A stretch of 64,000 nt of DNA from NCBI RefSeq assembly GCF_000315625.1, contig NW_005434587.1:62001-126000 (forward strand). Reading direction: 5' to 3'. A program made the translations under genes and the position numbers. This DNA comes from Guillardia theta CCMP2712. Taxonomy: Eukaryota; Protista; Cryptophyta. The first letter of the stretch is position 1. Every line of letters starts with the position of its first letter. Positions 44,442 to 54,246 of the stretch are shown here, piece by piece. The notes beneath the pieces are model-generated. The model was not told where the DNA came from. It worked only from the letters and a program-made list of their open reading frames with translations, and searched no databases.

Positions 44442-46540
44442 ATGATTTCCACAGGGTGTATGAAGATGACTCAAGACATACGCCAGGATCGCAGCGAATT
44501 TTCACAATTTCTCGTTCCTAAGAACGCTTCTTTACTCGAAGAAGTTTTGTCTCTAAGAGAACAGGTTACCTCACTGAAAAATACCCTTCAGATGATATAC
44601 ACGAGAGAAAACAACCAACTAGCACGAAAAGCAAAGAAGGTTATTGGTTTTTGGATTAGGAACAGTATGATGAAATCTTTCCATTCTTGGAAAAATATTG
44701 CAATTACCAGCAAACGAATGGCGATCATCATGGCCAGAGTGTCAAGGCGATGGGTCTATCACGCGGTAGATCCTGCCTTCCAAGCTTGGCACGCGAATTC
44801 CAAGCAGCAGATGCGCACAAAGCAGCTCGGAGCAAGGATTGTGAAGCATTGGCTCCGACGCTCGCTTGCTACAGCCTTCGATGGGTGGCATGAGCATGCT
44901 GGCCAGCTCAAGCGTCAGGGAGAGCTTTTGACTACGATCACGAGGCGATGGGTCTATCACGCGGTAGATCCTGCCTTCCAAGCTTGGCACGCGAATTCCA
45001 AGCAGCAGATGCGCACAAAGCAGCTCGGAGCAAGGATTGTGAAGCATTGGCTCCGACGCTCGCTTGCTACAGCCTTCGATGGGTGGCATGAGCATGCTGG
45101 CCAGCTCAAGCGTCAGGGAGAGCTTTTGACTACGATCACGAGGCGATGGGTCTATCACGCGGTAGATCCTGCCTTCCAAGCTTGGCACGCGAATTCCAAG
45201 CAGCAGATGCGCACAAAGCAGCTCGGAGCAAGGATTGTGAAGCATTGGCTCCGACGCTCGCTTGCTACAGCCTTCGATGGGTGGCATGAGCATGCTGGCC
45301 AGCTCAAGCGTCAGGGAGAGCTTTTGACTACGATCACGAGGCGATGGGTCTATCACGCGGTAGATCCTGCCTTCCAAGCTTGGCACGCAAATGCAAAGAG
45401 ACAGAAGAGAATGGATCAATTAGGGTTGAAAATAATTTTGAGCTGGAAATTCAAGTCCCTCTCCAAGGTAATGAGAAGGTGGAAAGTTTTCAGGACACAC
45501 ACAAGTATGGTGATGAACAACTCCCGACGAATATTTGCATACATCAGTGGACGAGTGAAGGAGAGTGCTTTCTTCAGTTGGGCAGACCACACACTACAAC
45601 ATTCTAAGTTAGACAAACATCTAGCTATGATCGCAAAAGAACGTCTAAAATCACGTCCGAAGCTCAAACGATCAAAGTCTGTGCCAAGTATGGACCGAAG
45701 GCATGTCGACAGACTTTATGCAGCGCTGGAGACACGATGGTGAGCGATATCAACTTGTCTAGGGATTTACTGAGAGCTCGATCAGGCTAAAAAGAGCAGA
45801 CGAATGTTGGGACAGCATAGAGCTTAAGATTCTGAAGCACATTGAAGCCTATGATCGCAAATACTGCACAAAGAAAAACTCGGAAATGATAGGTCTTCTT
45901 TAGCTACAAGTGTCTACTCTCTTGTTGACTTGGTGTTGCAGGGGGCCATCTCTTCGATCATCGTTACCAGAAGGCAGGGATGGAACCTTTGAAGTACAAG
46001 GGACAAGAGCAGTCTGAATGCTCTCTGACCATCTTTATCTCTTCAGGTTTCCGGAGACCATCCCTTCACTGATGGGATCTGTGGTCGTCGGGTTGCAGCA
46101 TGGGATACAGTCAGACCAGGCTGCAATGTGGAAGACCGAGAAGATGGAGCTTCGGGTGAGAGAGCAGGCTGGTCTTATAACACCTCACCAGTTTCCACAG
46201 AGGTACTGTTCCCATCTAGAAACCATCAACAACAGGCTCATCATCGAAAAGGTATACGAGATGTGCGTTACCTCAACCTTTGTTTCACTTCTGAGCAGAT
46301 TGACTCGTGTAAGCAAGGGCGTTTGTTTTTCTGGTGAGCAGAATGGAGCCTGAAAGGGCTGAGTGCCAAGTTTTCACCGTTGTACACGGCGACATTGTCA
46401 AGTGGTCCGACGTATCCAACAGAGGGATTCAAAGAGATATCAATCAGGTTGGATCGTGGGATGAAAGAAGCCGAAGAGGCTTGCGTTGGCTTCATGACAC
46501 GTGGACTGCTGGAATCATACATGGCCAGTTGTTCTCGTAA
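44442..46540 (+). CDS. Sfi1-like (centrin-binding) repeat protein; continues through short 3' exons
   Basis: FxxW motifs at 33-aa spacing (AVDPAFQAW, SLATAFDGW, MMKSFHSW, KESAFFSW). Donor near 45740 followed by exon LKRADECWDSIELK. The 3' end is tentative. Confidence 0.7.
44745..45388 (+). repeat. Perfect 198-bp coding tandem repeat (3.25 copies)
   Basis: AGGCGATGGGTCTATCACGCGG starts at 44745, 44943, 45141 and 45339. Confidence 0.95.
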
Positions 46541-47104
46541 ATTCGTGTGATCAATAACATGTGAAGTCTAACTCTCGGAGTGCTGGAAGACTGAAAACTT
46601 GATACTCTGTCAGCTCAATTTTCCCAAGTCTCCCCTTCCCACTGGCTACGTTCTCCTCATCCTCTCCTCTGCTTCTCCATCATCTGCTTGCATCTTTTCC
46701 CAGGTTCTTGTTTCCCTGGCTATCTCCTTCCTGTAAAAGAATTTAGCTAAATATTCGTGACATGAAGAAGAGGGGGTAGTAAATACTGGGTAAAAGAGGG
46801 GTGGTCAAAGACATGGGGGGTTTGACAAGTTCGTTGGTCAACCACGGCAGGAGATGGCAGAAAACGAGAAGGCGAAGGAGGAGGAAGAGGAGGAGGCGAA
46901 GGAAGAGGAGGAGGCGAAGGAGGCGAAGGAGGAGGAAGGCAACGATGATGCTGACAACGATCACTTCAAGGAGAGGAACGAGTGGTGGAGCTCGATCTGA
47001 AGGATCAGGAGAAAGTAAACAGCAAAACGGCAAGAAACATACAAGGGGGGATGGCATCGTTGGCTAGTCCGTGAGGAGGGAGAGGAAGGAGTAGCCTTGA
47101 GACG

Positions 47105-50100
47105 ATGTCTTCTCCTGTTGCACATCGGGAGGAGAAGGAGGGTGAGTCTGCCAACGATGATGTGCTCACAGAAGCAAACAATCTCCCAGCAGACGGTATT
47201 GAAGCAACTATGCAAGATCAGGGGGCCCTTGAGCAAGAGGATACGACTGTACAAGGATTTAACCTAGAAGAAGAGCAGGAGAATGTCGATCAGGATGGTC
47301 AAGAAGAACAAGACATCATGGACCATGTAGACAGGGTGGACAAAAAGCGCATTGATTGGAGACAACGGCTGATTTCCGTGCAGAATTCCTGGCAATGGCT
47401 GAGGGAACGGAGCAGGAGATTACGAAAAAAGATACGATATCATGCTTTCTTCCTTCTCGTCTCCATCGCAAGCTCGATCTCTCTGCTTCTTCGCCTCACC
47501 ATGACGACATCATCAATCTACTGGTTGAATCCTTTCTTCCTGTCGGACGTCGTCGCTGCTGTACTATTCACACTAGATGTTCTCATCGGTGTGATTGCAT
47601 ATGGCTTCTGTTCACATCCGGAGTCTTACTTCCGCATGAACCTCTACAACAAGGTCAGAAACTCTCTCTCCTCCCGTTCAAGTCGTTCTCCTGTTCTCGT
47701 CTATCACCGAGTCTTTAATTTCGGTCTCCTTCTTATCCTGCTTGCAGATCGATACACTCGTTGCAATCCTCATATGGCCAGAGATTGTACTCAGGATCTT
47801 TGGCTTCCGCTTGTCTTTCCGTACTCTCAAGATATTCCGCATCTTCTTCATCATCTCCAGAACCCGCGCGCTCCATCGCGTGCAGAGCATCGTCTCCTCC
47901 CTCGCGCAGGCCACGGCATCTCTGGCAGCCACCACCTTGCTCCTTGTCGTCGGGCTGCTCGGATTTGCTGTGGTGAGTGAAGATGTTCTGTTCTGTGTTA
48001 GCGATCTTTGACGGTGCTGAAACGCAACAGATGGGTGTGGAGTTGTACATGGGTTCGGTGAACAGGTTCTGCTACTGGATGGACACCCAAGACTTGGTGG
48101 TCCCAGTGAGGAACTGCAAGGCTGTCCGGGGTCCCTGGAGATCTAGCTGTTCCTTCATGCAGGAGTGCAAGGGGTCGGCTGAGAGCTCCGGGCACATCTC
48201 CTTCGATGACGCGCTCCTGGGATTCGTCACCGTGTTCCAGGTTGCGTCGATGGACAGCGCCTATGCGGTCATCCATACTTTCTTGCAGTCAGAGCCAGCC
48301 TTCAAGTTGTTGACTTGGTTGTTCTTTATCGCAATCAACGCTCTGTTCAGCATCATCGCGTTCAACATGTGAGGCTTTCACGGCCATGACGATGAGTTGC
48401 TTCATGTGGACTATGTTTCTTTGTGTTGGTCGTGGTGTTGACCACGGCGGTGTAACTGTGAAGTGACGTGTGTTCACAGGTTCACCGCGATTATCTCGAG
48501 CTACTTCCTCCTGGGCCTTGGAGGAGACAAGAAGGATCAGGACGAGCAACCGAAGGGGAAGGGGAACGCAGTCTTCCCGCTCAACGGCGACAACCCGTTC
48601 CAGGCAGAGGCTGAACGCGTCAAGACTCAATCCGTCAGGATTCGACGCACCCGCAGCGGGAGGACCCAGTCTCGTCAGGCGTCCAGAGGCTCCAGGAGGA
48701 TGGAAGAGGAGCAGGACGACGGTCTCAGCCTGTCCGACGTCCTTGAGAGTGACATCTGGAAGCTCTCGCTCGACTTCCTTATCATAGTCAACACCCTCAC
48801 CTTCCTCATCTGGAATGACGTGCCCTCAACTAGGGTCCGAGCTGTCTTCGAGTACATCCAGGACGTGACCTCCTCGCTCTTCCTCCTTGAGATCGTCCTT
48901 CGCGTCTACAGCGCGGGGGCAGTCTGGCAGTTTGCCAAGGATCCGACGAATCTCTTTGACGCCCTAGTCACCGTCGTCTCGTCCGTTGGGCTCTTTCTCC
49001 AGCTAGCCTCCGCCTCCTCCGCCTCCGTGCAGACGTGGAAGTCGATCTCAGTTATTCGCCTCCTCCGTACTTTGATGCAGCTCAGCCACACCAGGCAGAT
49101 CCTCATCCTTGCAGCGAAGTCGATCCCCGTTGTCTTCAACCTGATCATCGTCATCGTGGTACGTCTGCAAACCTGGTGAGATGCGATCCTGGTCTGACTC
49201 GTAGAGCTTGACAGGTTGTTCTCATGATGTTCTCGATCGCTGCGATGGACCTGATCGCAGGAGGAAAGAACGGGAGCAACGCCTACTTCGACAACTTCCC
49301 GACTTCAGTGCAGAACCTCGTGGAGATATTTGTGACTGACTCGTGGACGAGTATCATGTGGGGAAGCACCACCGACTCTTGTCTTGAGAGCACCGAGTGT
49401 AACTCCAAGTTCAACGACACGGTCGCGCTGGTCCTGCTGCTGCTCTTCTTCTTCCTCTCTCAGTTCGTCTTGTTGGCCCTGTTCATCGCAGTGATCCTTG
49501 ACAACTTTGGAAGTGACAGCCTTGATGTCAGCGATAGTGACAAGACAGCCTTCGAGAACTTTCTGCAGTTTGCAAGGATGAAGGTTGACGCGATGAGAGG
49601 AAAGTGAGTCGAGTGAACTTTGACGCAGATGAAAGCAGCAAGAGCAGCGCTATGGAGGACAGCAAAGGCTTGCTTCAAGAAGTGAGTGCTCGTTTTCTGT
49701 TGTTCAAATCTCAGCTTTCTTGCTCCCCTCGTTTCACTCCTGCGCTCTTCGAGCTTCTCTCAAAAATCTCCACAGGAAGGACAAGACGAAGATCAGGATC
49801 GAAGCGATGTCGGCAGAGGATTTGCTGCTCAACGAGACGTACCTCAAACAGTACAACCTGTCATGCCGGATAGACACGTGCAAGGATTACTTCGAGACCC
49901 AGATCGCTGACGATTCCTCGGCTCCGAGTTGGCAAGCCAACAATGTTTATGTCTTCAACTATGAGGGAAACTCGATGGTGGTACCTCTGCGCGTCATCAT
50001 ACTCAACAAACATGTGATCGAAAATCATGAGCTGGTGGGAGTTGGTTTCTATGCTCTAGATCTCGAAGCATTGCGCAAAGATGGTTTTGCTATGGAGGAG

Positions 50101-53100
50101 GAGTCAAGCCTGGAAGTGAAGATCGATCTCTACGAGAACGAAGAGCATGCTTGGAACATCTTTACGGAGCAGAATGCTGACGATGACAGTGAAGAAGAAG
50201 TTGAAGCGTGCGGGTCATTCATCTTCAATGTTTCTGTCTCCTCTCAACCTCGCCAGATTGCAAAGGAGGCGGAGATTGCAAGTGCTGAGGACAAGAACAA
50301 AACTGTCGATGATCAAGACAACCAACACGAGGATCCTGTAGATCAGGCAGATTATCCGCACCCGCCAGCAGAGCCTGTTGAGGACAAGGACCAAACTCCT
50401 GCTGCAAACCCTCAGAAGGATGCTTTGCAGGAGATGAGGCCGAAGACTGGTCTCCACAAGCTGATGATGAGGGTAGTCACCTCCAGAGCGAGTAAGTCCT
50501 TCATCTACATGCTCATCTTCTTCGATACTATTCTGTTTTCCCTCCATGCTCCTCCCGGCATGAGCTCAAGCATGTCCAAGGCCCTCTTCACTGTCCTCGA
50601 CTTCATGATCGACTTCTTGTTCTGGCTCGAGTTCGCGCTCAAGGTGGCAGCGTTCGGGCTGTTCGGCCGACGTCTTTCCTTCTCGCAGGACTTGGAGGAC
50701 GGGCAGGTGGTGGTGAAGGTGCACAAGACGCTGATGAGAAGCGGGTCCAACATCTTCGACCTCCTCGTCCTCGTCTCCTCCATCGGAAGGATCTTCAAGG
50801 TGTTTCAGCTCGACAAGGTGGTCGGCTCGGGCCCTATGTTCCTCTTCACGCTGCTGAGGAGCCTCCGACCTGTCCGCCTTGTCCTGGGGAGCAAGTCGAT
50901 GAGGGAGATCGTTTATACCATCGTGACAGGAGCAGCGGAGGTTGTGGAGGTCATCATCATCCTCCTGGTCTTCTTCCTCATCTTCTCGGTCGTCGGCATG
51001 GGGATCTTTGCCGACAAGTTCTTCCGCTGCTCGGATTCCGAGATCGCCCTCCTCCGTACCGTGGGGCCCTTTCTCAGTGATAGGGCCAACTGTGTGGGTT
51101 CCTTCTCCTACTCGTCCTCCTCCTCTCCCTACCTCCTCCCGCGCTCTTGGTGGAACCCACAGCACAGCTTCGATGGCATGACGGAGAGTCTGACGACGCT
51201 ATTCCGCGTCATCACACTCAAGTGGCTCAACCCGCTGACCGACGCCATGGCGGCAACGGAGGTTGACATGCAGCCTGAGCAGAACCACCAGAGTGCGAGG
51301 ATGCTGTTCTTCCTCGCCTTCATCCTGTGCGGCACCTACTTCGGTCTCAACCTCTTCGTCGCCATCATCACCAACTGCTACTTCAAGGCGACGCTGGGGG
51401 GAGCAGGCTCTGAGGAGGAGATCGAGTGGATCGCCGTCAAACGCATGATCCTCGGCGCGAAGCCTGCTCGCGTCTGGCCGCCTCCTCGCAACTTCCTCTC
51501 CAGGTTCTTCCGTCGGGTTCTCCAGCACAGATTCTGGAACCTGCTCATGCTCTTCCTCACCTGCGTCAACTTCGGCCTCATCTGCTTCCACAACCTCTCC
51601 TCCTCCTCCTCCTACCTGCAAGGGCTGGAGGCCTGGTCCGTTCTCTTTCTCGTCTCCATCCTCGTCGAAGATTTCCTCTCCCTCCTCGCCTTTGGGATCC
51701 CAACTTGCCTTAACGACGCGCTGTTCTGGCTAGACGCCGTCGTCCTCACTGCCATCCTCTTTTCTTCCGCCGCTTCTGGCAGCATGAAAATCTCCTTCGG
51801 GGTCCTCCGCCTCCTCCGCCTCCCCCGCCTCCTCAACTACATGCAGGTCAAGAGCTCGTACGCTACAGCTGGGGCAGTGCTGGAGACCTATTTTCTCTCT
51901 CGCGGGGAGTTCATGAAGATCATTATCCTCCTCTCGGTCCTCCTCTGGATCTTTGCGTCCGTCAGCTCGCAGGTGTTTGGGGACATCAAGTTCGGAGCAA
52001 GGATCAGCCAGACCGCAAACTTCGCCTCCTTCCCAGCAGCGTACATGACGCTCTTCCAGATCCTCTTCGGCGACGAGTGGAACCTGATGATGGACGACTG
52101 CCGGGTCGCGTTCCCCTCCTGCACCAGCTGGAAGCTCGGGTACCGCCTTCCTTCCGGGGACACCTTCGACGACTGCGGCTCCTCCATCTCCCCTGCCTTC
52201 TTCATCCTCTTCAAGATCGTCGTCGACTTCGTAGTGATGAAGCTCTTCGTCGGCCTCATCGTAGAGAACTTCTCCTTCTGCAGGAGCCAGGCGCAGGAGG
52301 AGGGCATCCTGTCTAACGACTACATCCGCACCTTCACTGTCGTCTGGCTCAGGTTTGACCCCTCCCGCCTCGGCTGTATCAAGTTGCGAGAGCTGTACTC
52401 CTTCATGCTCCAACTCCCTCCTCCTCTCGGCCTTGCCGGGAGTTCCAAAGGATACAACCTGCAGTACCTACCTGTCAGGACGGAGCTTTCCCTGCTGTCC
52501 TCCCACAGGGTCAAGATCTCTCAGCATGCAGCTGATAGCAGGACAGGCATGCGGCTGCTCGGGCTGCAGGATCGTCTGTTGACTGCCCGTGTGGCATTGA
52601 GCGCGGGGAGGGTAGGGCTGAAGAAGGATGAGAGGATCTTTGAGCTGGTGGACGACTTTGAAGATCCGGAGACGAAGGAGAGGAGGGCGAGCCGAGGAGA
52701 CTTTGTGGTGGTCAGGACAGAGGACTTCTACAAGAGGAGCGAGAAGGCAGGAGAGAAAATCGCTGTCCTCCGAAACGGCAAGAGGATCCGCTTGCCAAGA
52801 GAGCTTCTCCGCTGGACCAGGATGCCAGGGGAGGAGCTGTGGACCTCCACGGTGCAGGACGCGGGGAGGAGGAAGTTTTCAAGGAGGGAGAAGGAGGCGG
52901 CGGTGAAGATTCAGCAGTGGTACAGAAAGGTCATCGAGCACAGGAAGGAGACAGTGCTTCGGAACGTGCACCGAGCTCGAGCACGGGCAAGGCAGATGCG
53001 CCAGAACATGGAGGTAGTAGAAGCAGGAAGCAAGTTTGGCACAGCAGATGAAGAGGATGATGATGATGAGGAGGAGGAGGAGGAGGAGGAGGAGGAGGAG

Positions 53101-54246
53101 GAGGAGAAGAAGGGGAGAGGGAGGAGGAAGGCCAGAGGATCCGAGGAGAACACCAGGGAGGAAGCCGGAAGCACGTTTGTCGGGAGTGAACCTGGTTGGA
53201 AGTTTGCCCGGCGCCTGGAGATCTTGATGCTGAGAGCGATGATCTCTTTCCTCGTCCTCTTCCTGCGACCGGGGACTTCCTTCGAGCCCGAGGTCCCTCC
53301 TGACGCGATCTACTTCGAGGAGATCTGCATGTCGCTGGTCTACTGGCACAACAAGGACAAGTGTCCTCTCAGCCAGAGGAAGAGGCGAGAGAAAATCGAC
53401 GACCAAGTCAAGTCCTTGCAGGCCTTCCACATCATCTCCGCGTGGTACCTGGGGTGGAAGAGGAGGAGGATGCAGAAAGCAGCTGTTAGAGCCGACAGCT
53501 TGCTGGTTGACGACGCCCCTCCCTCGCCCGTGGAGGAGGAGGCGGCTCGCCCGCCGCTGACGGAGGAAGAGCTGCAGGCCGAGATCGATCGAAGAGTCTC
53601 GGAGGTGGTGGGGGAGCTGAAGACTGAGACGGAGAGTCTGAACAGGACGGCGAGGATCATGAAAACTGAGAACGACCTGCTGAACTGGACGATACAGGAT
53701 CAGGAGCGGAAAATCGAGGAGCTCAAGGCGCAGGTCGCTGCGAGGAACGAACAGCTCTGGAGGATGAAGGAAAAGGAGATGAATCGCTCCAGCGATATAC
53801 CCGAGCTGGCCCTCCCTGCTCAGCCCGAACTGCCTCCTCTCCCTGGCCTCGTGGTGAGCGAAGGGACAGGTCTGCAGCTCGGGAGCAGCGAAGGTCGAGG
53901 AGGGAATGAGCAGGGAGCCCGGTCGAAGTTGTACAACGCGGCCAAGGCCACCCAGAGCATGCAGAAGCTCGCGTCGTCCTCCCCTTGGAAGCGGGAGAAG
54001 AAAATCCTGCAGGAGATCGAGGAGCACAAGGAGGCCATCCAGGCGCTCTCCATCCAGGTCAAGCTCGCCAAGCACGAGCAGCAACAGACTGTGAGCTCCG
54101 CTTCCTATCACACCTCGAGCCCTCAGACGTGCCACTAACTTCACTGACCTTGACAGGCTCCAGAGGTCCGAGCTCGAGTCGAGCTGAAGCCGAGGTTGCC
54201 AGCATGCTTGTCAAGTGCCACGAGGCTCGCTGACTCGGAGGCTTGA
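47105..54246 (+). CDS. Four-domain (24-TM) voltage-gated-like cation channel alpha subunit, NALCN/Cch1-like
   Basis: Four S4 segments (FRTLKIFRIF, VIRLLRTL, LLRSLRPVRL, VLRLLRLPRL), four pore loops, S6 motifs (ALFIAVILDNF, LNLFVAIITNCY, KLFVGLIVENFSF), C-terminal WLRFDP...LPPPLG and an IQ motif. The stop is at 54138, or at 54246 if a last intron is used. Confidence 0.92.

What the first reader, a model, noticed from the sequence alone, without database searches (positions are those of the whole stretch)
48230..52100. NALCN/Cch1-like four-domain channel with an unusual D-D-K-D selectivity filter
Seen: the pore loops are DI FQVASM-D-SA (GAC 48253), DII EIFVT-D-SW (49338), DIII FRVITL-K-W (AAG 51220, with the usual following Gly missing) and DIV FQILFG-D-EW (52072). 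Established: Cav is EEEE/EEDD, Nav is DEKA and NALCN is EEKE, and the DIII lysine is a key determinant of Na+ preference. The flanks (PRSWWNP..FD; MDDC....P.C...DCG; IVENFSF...ILS..IRTF..VW) resemble NALCN/Cch1 most. S4 segments carry only about 3 core basic residues. Inference: an algal channel with an animal-like DIII lysine, possibly an independently derived Na+/leak selectivity.
Basis: partly seen in the sequence, partly recalled or inferred. Interest (0 to 1): 0.75.

Follow-up and report, generated by a model that had tools for sequence, protein, structure and literature searches.

The report
Algal channel with lysine pore ring
This is an intact gene of the alga Guillardia theta for a four-domain cation channel whose pore ring reads Asp/Asp/Lys/Asp, but that filter type was already reported for this species in 2018, so this is a further, unusually divergent copy of a known kind.

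Summary
The four codons sit exactly where stated: GAC 48253, GAC 49338, AAG 51220 and GAC 52072. All lie inside exons of a six-exon, in-frame 2,180-codon gene on the + strand (47105-54138). The domain III loop is one residue short: the usual Gly is missing.

Every alignment I ran puts the Lys in the ring column. An AlphaFold model of domains III-IV puts it three residues after pore helix P1, as for the domain IV Asp.

The genome is Guillardia theta CCMP2712. It holds at least 8 paralogues with the same short T-x-K-[W/Y] loop. So do 19 of 23 cryptophyte and environmental relatives, and Palpitomonas.

This is not new as a kind. Pozdnyakov et al. 2018 (PMC5824947) reported D/D/K/D(G) filters in Guillardia and oomycetes, likened them to NALCN, and proposed sodium permeability. 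This locus is not among their ten sequences, and I found no public protein model for it.

"NALCN/Cch1-like" is only partly right. The family is its own clade outside Cav/Nav. A different Guillardia gene sits next to NALCN/Cch1 in the published tree.

No RNA support was found. Ion selectivity is untested.

The scan has flagged sister genes elsewhere in this genome (D-D-K-D and D/D/K/A notes).

The parts
47105..47653 (+). Exon 1: acidic N-terminus and domain I S1-S2
   Evidence: ORF from ATG 47105. Weak Ion_trans hit. Donor GTCAGA at 47654.
47748..47972 (+). Exon 2: domain I S3-S5, including S4 (LRIFGFRLSFRTLKIFRIFF)
   Evidence: Acceptor TGCAG, donor GTGAGT. The junction gives ...LYNK|IDTLVAIL, matching the relatives' 'YNKID'.
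48031..48368 (+). Exon 3: domain I pore loop and S6. Ring Asp codon GAC at 48253-48255.
   Evidence: Ion_trans positions 146-224. The acceptor at 48030 has an in-frame alternative at 48042.
48480..49158 (+). Exon 4: I-II linker and domain II S1-S5
   Evidence: Ion_trans E=6.6e-12. Intron 48369-48479, GTGAGG..CACAG.
49215..49603 (+). Exon 5: domain II pore loop and S6. Ring Asp codon GAC at 49338-49340.
   Evidence: Ion_trans E=3.6e-12..
49776..54138 (+). Exon 6: II-III linker, domains III and IV, EF-hand-like post-S6 region, and a long acidic/coiled C-terminal tail ending at the stop codon
   Evidence: Single open frame of 1,472 codons, 49720-54138. Ion_trans 2.7e-61; sub-threshold GPHH hit. 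The acceptor at 49775 is the least certain splice site.
49789..50043 (+). Possible degenerate C2 domain in the II-III linker
   Evidence: Pfam C2 E=0.0085, 16.7 bits, below the 22-bit cut-off, covering profile positions 2-84 of 104. Not established.
50830..50889 (+). Domain III S4 with only three Arg in register (R-S-L-R-P-V-R)
   Evidence: Alignment A1: R2 replaced by T and the outer K by F, whereas paralogues keep 5-6 charges.
51220..51222 (+). Domain III ring lysine (AAG), in a loop one residue shorter than in Cav/Nav
   Evidence: alignments; model: P1 helix ends at residue 268, Lys is residue 271, P2 helix starts at 273.
51796..51852 (+). Domain IV S4 with three Arg, then Asn and Gln where relatives have R4 and R5
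52072..52074 (+). Domain IV ring Asp (GAC), followed by Glu at n+1
52240..52242 (+). Domain IV S6: Lys where 43 of 48 aligned channels have the conserved Asn
   Evidence: column at residue 611 of the III-IV piece.

Best explanation
The gene encodes a divergent paralogue of a cryptophyte-wide family of four-domain (Cav/Nav-superfamily) cation channels. The family's selectivity-filter ring is Asp/Asp/Lys/Asp, and its domain III pore loop is one residue shorter than in animal channels. The sequence shows that the gene is intact, has four domains, and places the lysine in the ring column. By inference from Nav DEKA, NALCN EEKE and Cav Glu-to-Lys mutants, a ring of three carboxylates plus one ammonium group should bind Ca2+ poorly. 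The channel would then most likely pass monovalent cations (Na+/K+), perhaps with block by external Ca2+. In this copy the domain III and IV voltage sensors have been trimmed to three Arg each, and the conserved domain IV S6 Asn is replaced by Lys. Gating is therefore probably less steeply voltage-dependent than in its sister genes. The gene is not an orthologue of NALCN or Cch1.
For: The codons and a six-exon in-frame model were verified. Ion_trans hits cover all four domains. The Lys aligns with the ring Glu/Asp/Lys in HMMER alignments to Cav1.1, Cav1.2 and Cav3.2 domain III, in cross-domain alignments, in a 50-sequence MAFFT alignment and in a full-length family alignment. In the AlphaFold2 model of domains III-IV (mean pLDDT 85.5, about 95 at the loop), Lys271 and Asp555 both lie three residues after the end of their P1 helix. 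The Lys is kept in all 8 paralogues of this genome, which are only 27-33% identical to this gene. It is also kept in 19 of 23 relatives from Hanusia, Hemiselmis, MMETSP and environmental contigs, and in Palpitomonas. The family forms a clade with 100/100 support, outside a Cav/Nav/Cav3 grouping supported at 98/96. The species is proven by a 100% match of paralogue L014 to GUITHDRAFT_132377 on a contig of identical length. The gene keeps 34 of 43 highly conserved columns, including the extracellular Cys pairs and the S2/S3 counter-charges. Precedent: PMC5824947.
Against: There is no transcript support. RNA runs gave 7 short, mostly imperfect reads in exon 1 and no splice joints. No public protein model of this locus turned up. 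The branch is long (1.39 against a median of 0.46), and 9 of 43 conserved columns have changed, so relaxed constraint is possible. The shortened loop means the ring geometry cannot be taken from Cav/Nav. I modelled only half the channel and could not measure side-chain positions. No member of this family has been recorded electrophysiologically, so selectivity is pure inference.
Confidence: 0.7

Rival explanations
1. It is a true NALCN/Cch1-type channel: a voltage-insensitive sodium-leak or Mid1-partnered channel orthologous to the animal and fungal ones.
For: The domain IV pore loop plus post-S6 stretch scores best against NALCN (74.9 against 60.2 bits for Cav1.2). The ring has the same charge pattern as EEKE, with an acidic n+1 residue in domain IV. 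S4 charge is reduced. The genome encodes Mid1-domain proteins (PMC12412391). The family lies outside the Cav/Nav/Cav3 group.
Against: The family is its own 100/100 clade and is not joined to the two fungal Cch1 rows with any support (44/12 and 66/90). In the published tree, the cryptophyte clade beside NALCN/Cch1 contains a different Guillardia gene, XP_005828971 (= L009/L020). The domain III loop flank matches Cav, and NALCN is not listed. Sister paralogues carry full 5-6 charge S4 segments. I had no NALCN sequence for my own tree.
Confidence: 0.08
2. The lysine is not a ring residue. Because the loop is one residue short, the ring position (two before the Trp) is the preceding Leu, and the Lys sits at the outer n+1 site. 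The filter would then be D/D/L/D.
For: If the loop is anchored on the conserved Trp instead of on helix P1, the Lys falls at W-1. One pairwise tblastn alignment (to L010) placed the gap before the Lys.
Against: All HMMER and MAFFT alignments place the gap after the Lys. In the model the Lys lies at P1 end +3, like the domain IV Asp. The residue before the Lys varies (L/I/F/V) across the family while the Lys is fixed, which is the pattern expected if the Lys is the functional site.
Confidence: 0.1
3. The copy is a silent, decaying duplicate with no present function.
For: There are almost no RNA reads in the sampled runs and no public gene model. It has the longest branch in the family. It has lost S4 charges and the domain IV S6 Asn.
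Against: An uninterrupted 1,472-codon frame plus five further exons with canonical GT-AG sites and correct phases is not expected of a long-dead gene. It keeps 34 of 43 conserved columns, all ring residues and all pore-loop cysteines. Only about 6% of the one raw RNA run was read.
Confidence: 0.12

Closest known systems
Guillardia/oomycete D/D/K/D(G) four-domain channels (clades WSC VIII and WSC VI of Pozdnyakov et al. 2018, PMC5824947); in G. theta these include XP_005840919 (GUITHDRAFT_132377) and XP_005824876
   Same: Same species, same ring (D/D/K/D with acidic n+1 in domain IV), same short domain III loop, and one clade with 100/100 support.
   Different: This locus is only 27-33% identical to those genes. 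Its S4 strings match none of the ten Guillardia rows in the paper's Table S2. It has fewer S4 charges, a Lys in domain IV S6, five introns (GUITHDRAFT_132377 is a single open frame), and no public model that I could find.
NALCN (animal sodium-leak channel, EEKE ring; PDB 6XIW, 7CU3, 7SX3)
   Same: One Lys in domain III among three acidic ring residues. Acidic n+1 residue in domain IV. The domain IV loop motif DC..PP.C...DCG and the IVENFS stretch align well. Fold TM-score 0.64-0.67.
   Different: Asp replaces Glu. The domain III loop is shorter. It is not an orthologue. Whole III-IV similarity is lower than to Cav1.2. The UNC79/UNC80 partnership was not examined.
Nav1 (DEKA ring)
   Same: The domain III Lys falls in the same alignment column as the Nav 'TFKGW' Lys.
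   Different: Domain IV has Asp, not Ala. There is no IFM-type III-IV linker motif. It falls in a separate clade. The sister gene on contig C191 (XP_005820120) is closer in ring pattern: D/D/K/A.
High-voltage-activated Cav1/Cav2 (EEEE ring)
   Same: Best overall solved-structure match (Cav1.2, 1.5e-55). The domain III turret 'PRSW.N..FD' is shared. Sub-threshold GPHH/EF-hand-like post-S6 region.
   Different: The ring is not EEEE. It lies outside the Cav/Nav grouping in the tree (98/96).

Membership tests
Four-domain voltage-gated cation channel superfamily (Cav/Nav/NALCN/Cch1) | Four tandem 6TM Ion_trans repeats in one polypeptide | tested here: met
   Pfam PF00520 hits on exon pieces covering domains I-IV. 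Domains III-IV align over about 680 residues with solved Cav, Nav and NALCN chains.
Four-domain voltage-gated cation channel superfamily (Cav/Nav/NALCN/Cch1) | P1 helix, turn and P2 helix pore-loop architecture, with one ring residue per domain | tested here: met
   The AF2 model shows P1/turn/P2 in domains III and IV. The domain I and II loops align with paralogues and Cav. Domains I-II were not modelled.
Cryptophyte D/D/K/D family (WSC VIII of PMC5824947) | Ring D/D/K/D(G/A), with Lys in domain III and an acidic residue at n+1 of domain IV | tested here: met
Cryptophyte D/D/K/D family (WSC VIII of PMC5824947) | Falls in one clade with the published Guillardia members | tested here: met
   100/100 support in the careful tree, together with L003 (= GUITHDRAFT_132377) and L004 (= GUITHDRAFT_166006).
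NALCN/Cch1 | Orthology: falls inside, or as sister to, the NALCN/Cch1 clade | tested here: inconclusive
   My tree gives no supported union with the two Cch1 rows, and I had no NALCN sequence to include. In the published tree the neighbour clade of NALCN/Cch1 holds a different Guillardia gene. This family seems to lie in that paper's broad 'clade A'; that is my reading of the Newick text, not a parsed result.
NALCN/Cch1 | EEKE/EKEE (NALCN) or Cch1-type ring | tested here: not met
   The ring is D/D/K/D. The charge pattern matches, but the residues and the loop length differ.
NALCN/Cch1 | Arg/Lys-poor S4 segments and loss of classical voltage gating | tested here: inconclusive
   Each S4 has three in-register charges and the S2/S3 counter-charges are kept. 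This is reduced, but not under the '<3' criterion used in PMC5824947. Function was not testable.
NALCN/Cch1 | Works with FAM155/Mid1 (and UNC79/UNC80) | not testable with these tools
   Mid1-domain genes exist in the genome (PMC12412391). Nothing links them to this channel rather than to XP_005828971.
Nav1 sodium channels | DEKA ring and membership of the Nav clade | tested here: not met
   The ring is D/D/K/D. The Nav rows group with Cav, away from this family.

The most novel reading that the evidence does not exclude
This particular copy could be a convergently evolved, weakly voltage-dependent sodium-leak-type channel of a cryptophyte, that is, a functional analogue of NALCN that arose inside the D/D/K/D family. 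It combines the lysine ring with S4 segments trimmed to three charges in domains III and IV and a Lys in place of the conserved domain IV S6 Asn, none of which its seven sister genes show.
Probability: 0.12. Interest if true: 0.6.

Novelty: new member of a known kind. Interest (0 to 1): 0.3.

Why it matters
Lysine in the pore ring is the classic route to sodium permeability in animal Nav and NALCN channels. A lysine ring conserved across a whole protist family would be an independent origin of sodium-type four-domain channels outside animals. It would also be a natural experiment on how a shortened domain III loop carries that lysine. That idea has been in print since 2018 and is still untested by electrophysiology. 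What this locus adds is modest. It is an eighth Guillardia paralogue, apparently unannotated. It has reduced voltage-sensor charge, which makes it a useful contrast to its fully charged sister genes if the family is ever expressed and recorded.

Tried and rejected
- **RNA support.** The one reads call showed that run X1 is genomic DNA, with contigs running straight through the predicted introns. The RNA runs gave only low-complexity matches and 7 imperfect reads in exon 1. There is therefore no cDNA test of the exon model.
- **Public model of this gene.** Two word searches, covering lengths 810-2576 aa and 374-1190 aa, returned no identical protein. This is a blank, not proof of absence.
- **Pore motifs in the PMC12412391 supplement.** The search found nothing, but that sequence file was cut when stored.
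- **Foldseek against PDB.** It cannot tell Cav, Nav and NALCN apart for this model: TM-scores are 0.64-0.73 for all.
- **Tree building.** One MAFFT run timed out and was redone in fast mode.
- **No NALCN sequence.** None could be obtained by reference, so NALCN is absent from my trees. I used two fungal Cch1-like proteins and the Guillardia gene that the literature places next to NALCN/Cch1 as stand-ins.
- **Spliced protein.** The joined 2,180-residue protein was never sent to any search or fold. Exons were handled one by one, by reference, so domains I-II were not modelled and no four-domain structure was built.
Full report
**What is there**

The + strand between 47105 and 54138 carries a four-domain channel gene. 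Mechanical ORFs and stop-to-stop frames give six coding pieces. Each piece hits Pfam Ion_trans.

I enumerated GT/GC-AG pairs that keep the frame open. This gives five short introns: 47654-47747, 47973-48030, 48369-48479, 49159-49214 and 49604-49775. All have GT donors and CAG acceptors.

The six exons sum to 6,543 nt, or 2,180 codons plus the stop, in frame. The last acceptor and the 48030/48042 choice are the least certain.

I did not send the joined protein to any search or fold. Everything was done exon by exon, by reference. Domains III-IV, the II-III linker and the tail lie in one 1,472-codon frame.

**The observation**

One search confirms the codons at the stated places:

| Domain | Codon | Position | Context |
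|---|---|---|---|
| I | GAC (D) | 48253 | VFQVASM-D-SAY |
| II | GAC (D) | 49338 | EIFVT-D-SW |
| III | AAG (K) | 51220 | FRVITL-K-W |
| IV | GAC (D) | 52072 | FQILFG-D-EW |

All four sit far from splice sites.

**Is the Lys in the ring?**

- HMMER aligns 'tlfrvitlk.wlnpl' with Cav1.1 and Cav1.2 domain III 'lftvstfegwp', so K pairs with E. It aligns the same stretch with Cav3.2 'lfvlsskdgwv', so K pairs with the ring D. In each case there is a one-column gap at the Gly. Cross-domain alignments agree.
- A 50-sequence MAFFT alignment (A1) and a full-length family alignment put the Lys in the same column as Nav 'TFKGW' K and Cav 'TFEGW' E.
- An AlphaFold2 model of the III-IV half has mean pLDDT 85.5, pTM 0.85, and about 95 at the loops. 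In domain III, helix P1 spans 257-268, the turn is T269-L270-K271-W272, and P2 spans 273-281. In domain IV, P1 spans 541-552, the turn is F-G-D555-E, and P2 starts at 557. Lys271 and Asp555 are therefore both the third residue after P1.

One pairwise alignment (to L010) put the gap before the Lys. I had no access to model coordinates, so a residual doubt remains. I put it at about 10%.

**Organism and family**

The assembly is 87.1 Mb in 669 contigs. The intronless paralogue on contig C4 (L014, 1,859-codon frame) is 100% identical to GUITHDRAFT_132377 of Guillardia theta CCMP2712, on a contig of the same length. The species named in earlier scan notes is therefore confirmed.

A six-frame search of the genome finds at least 16 four-domain channel loci. 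Eight of them share the short domain III loop with Lys:

| Contig | Domain III motif |
|---|---|
| C87 (this gene) | TLKW |
| C3 | TLKW |
| C191 | MLKW |
| C4 | TIKY |
| C38 | TIKY |
| C128 | TFKY |
| C104 | TFKY |
| C29 | TLKY |

Where I could read domains I and II, they carry Asp. C191 (= XP_005820120) reads D/D/K/A.

A word search with the C4 gene returned relatives from Hanusia phi, Hemiselmis, MMETSP transcriptomes and many environmental contigs. Of 23 relatives, 19 keep the Lys; the exceptions are E, P and N (twice). Palpitomonas bilix also reads D/D/K/D with 'TLK-W'.

The nearest non-Guillardia relatives of this particular gene are P0001 and P0002 (28-29% identity). They have S or N at the position.

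In a careful LG+G4 tree:
- The family is one side of a branch with 100/100 support.
- This gene groups with C191, C3 and P0001/P0002 (100/99), on the longest end branch (1.39).
- Cav1/2, Cav3, Nav and several protist channels form a 98/96 group that excludes both this family and the Cch1/XP_005828971 set.

**Literature**

Pozdnyakov et al. 2018 (PMC5824947) state that sequences from clade WSC VI (Phytophthora, Saprolegnia) and clade WSC VIII (Guillardia) have D/D/K/D(G) filters that resemble NALCN's E/E/K/E. They note that these carry D/E at n+1 of domain IV, and that they are candidate sodium-selective or sodium-permeable channels.

Their ten Guillardia accessions and S4 strings do not include this locus. 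Motif look-ups tie Guillt7 (XP_005840919) to C4.

The 2025 JGP paper on NALCN/Cch1 origins (PMC12412391) places five Guillardia members of this family in one assemblage with Goniomonas, Palpitomonas and two oomycete sequences. The cryptophyte clade that sits beside NALCN/Cch1 contains a different gene, XP_005828971, which is L009/L020 on C55. Its Geminigera cryophila sister (P000014, labelled 'Cch1' in the supplement) was the one modelled with Mid1.

By my reading of the Newick text, the lysine family lies inside that paper's broad 'clade A', which also holds NALCN/Cch1. I could not parse the tree by program.

**How NALCN-like is it?**

The evidence is mixed.
- Over domains III-IV the best solved match is Cav1.2 (1.5e-55). 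Nav1.7 scores 6e-42 and NALCN 3e-36.
- The domain IV loop plus post-S6 piece scores best on NALCN: 74.9 against 60.2 bits, sharing 'DC.V.PP.C...DCG' and 'IVENFS'.
- The domain III loop piece scores best on Cav3.2 and Cav1, and NALCN is not listed.
- Fold comparison does not discriminate.
- Mid1-domain genes exist in the genome.

**What is special about this copy**

- Against 49 aligned channels it keeps 34 of 43 columns that are at least 85% conserved.
- Among the columns it has lost are domain III S4 R2 (now T), domain IV S4 R4 (now N) and the domain IV S6 Asn (now K).
- Its paralogues keep 5-6 S4 charges.
- The S2 Glu and S3 Asp counter-charges are present.
- No RNA support was found, and no public model was found.

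**Mechanism**

Shown: the gene is an intact four-domain channel with a conserved domain III ring lysine.

Inferred from established work on Nav DEKA, NALCN EEKE and Cav Glu-to-Lys mutants (my own knowledge, and the summary in PMC5824947): three carboxylates plus one lysine should not form the high-affinity Ca2+ site of an EEEE ring. Monovalent permeation is therefore the likeliest outcome. The trimmed S4 segments suggest weaker voltage dependence. None of this has been measured for any family member.

**Verdict**

As a kind it has been known since 2018. This locus is a new, divergent, possibly unannotated member.

Noticed in passing
window 49789-50043 (II-III linker): There is a sub-threshold Pfam C2 hit (E=0.0085, 16.7 bits against a 22-bit cut-off) spanning most of the profile. 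A family relative from Hemiselmis andersenii (P0122) has a significant C2 domain (6.6e-10), but at its N-terminus. A lipid/Ca2+-binding module on these channels may be real.
   Followed up: partly
window 44442-45743 (+): An ORF of 433 aa sits just upstream of the channel gene. It contains near-perfect tandem repeats of about 66 aa (RRWVYHAVDPAFQAWHANSKQQMRTKQLGARIVKHWLRRSLATAFDGWHEHAGQLKRQGELLTTIT) and has a weak Sfi1-like Pfam hit.
   Followed up: no
L008/L019 (G000:C191, about 84965-89000, minus strand): The sister gene XP_005820120 (GUITHDRAFT_148154) reads D/D/K/A. This is the closest ring in this genome to the animal Nav DEKA filter.
   Followed up: partly
P0001 and P0002 (JGI metagenome contigs): These are the nearest relatives of this gene's subclade outside Guillardia. 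They have replaced the ring Lys by Ser or Asn and carry Glu in domain IV (D/D/S/E and D/D/N/E). The Lys has therefore been lost secondarily at least four times in the family.
   Followed up: partly
window 52240-52242: The domain IV S6 Asn, conserved in 43 of 48 aligned channels, is Lys in this gene (VVMKLFVGL). This residue class is tied to gating in Nav/Cav channels.
   Followed up: no
window 53050-53130 and 46800-47000: Long runs of Glu/Asp codons (EEEEEE...) and Arg/Lys-rich low complexity attract spurious contig matches from unrelated RNA assemblies. These inflate the apparent depth in read-laying tables.
   Followed up: no
L021 (G000:C93:242106-242264) and L022 (G000:C5:576970-577086): Two loci match the Pfam Mid1 domain above its cut-off. 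This agrees with the published report of FAM155/Mid1 homologues in Cryptista.
   Followed up: no
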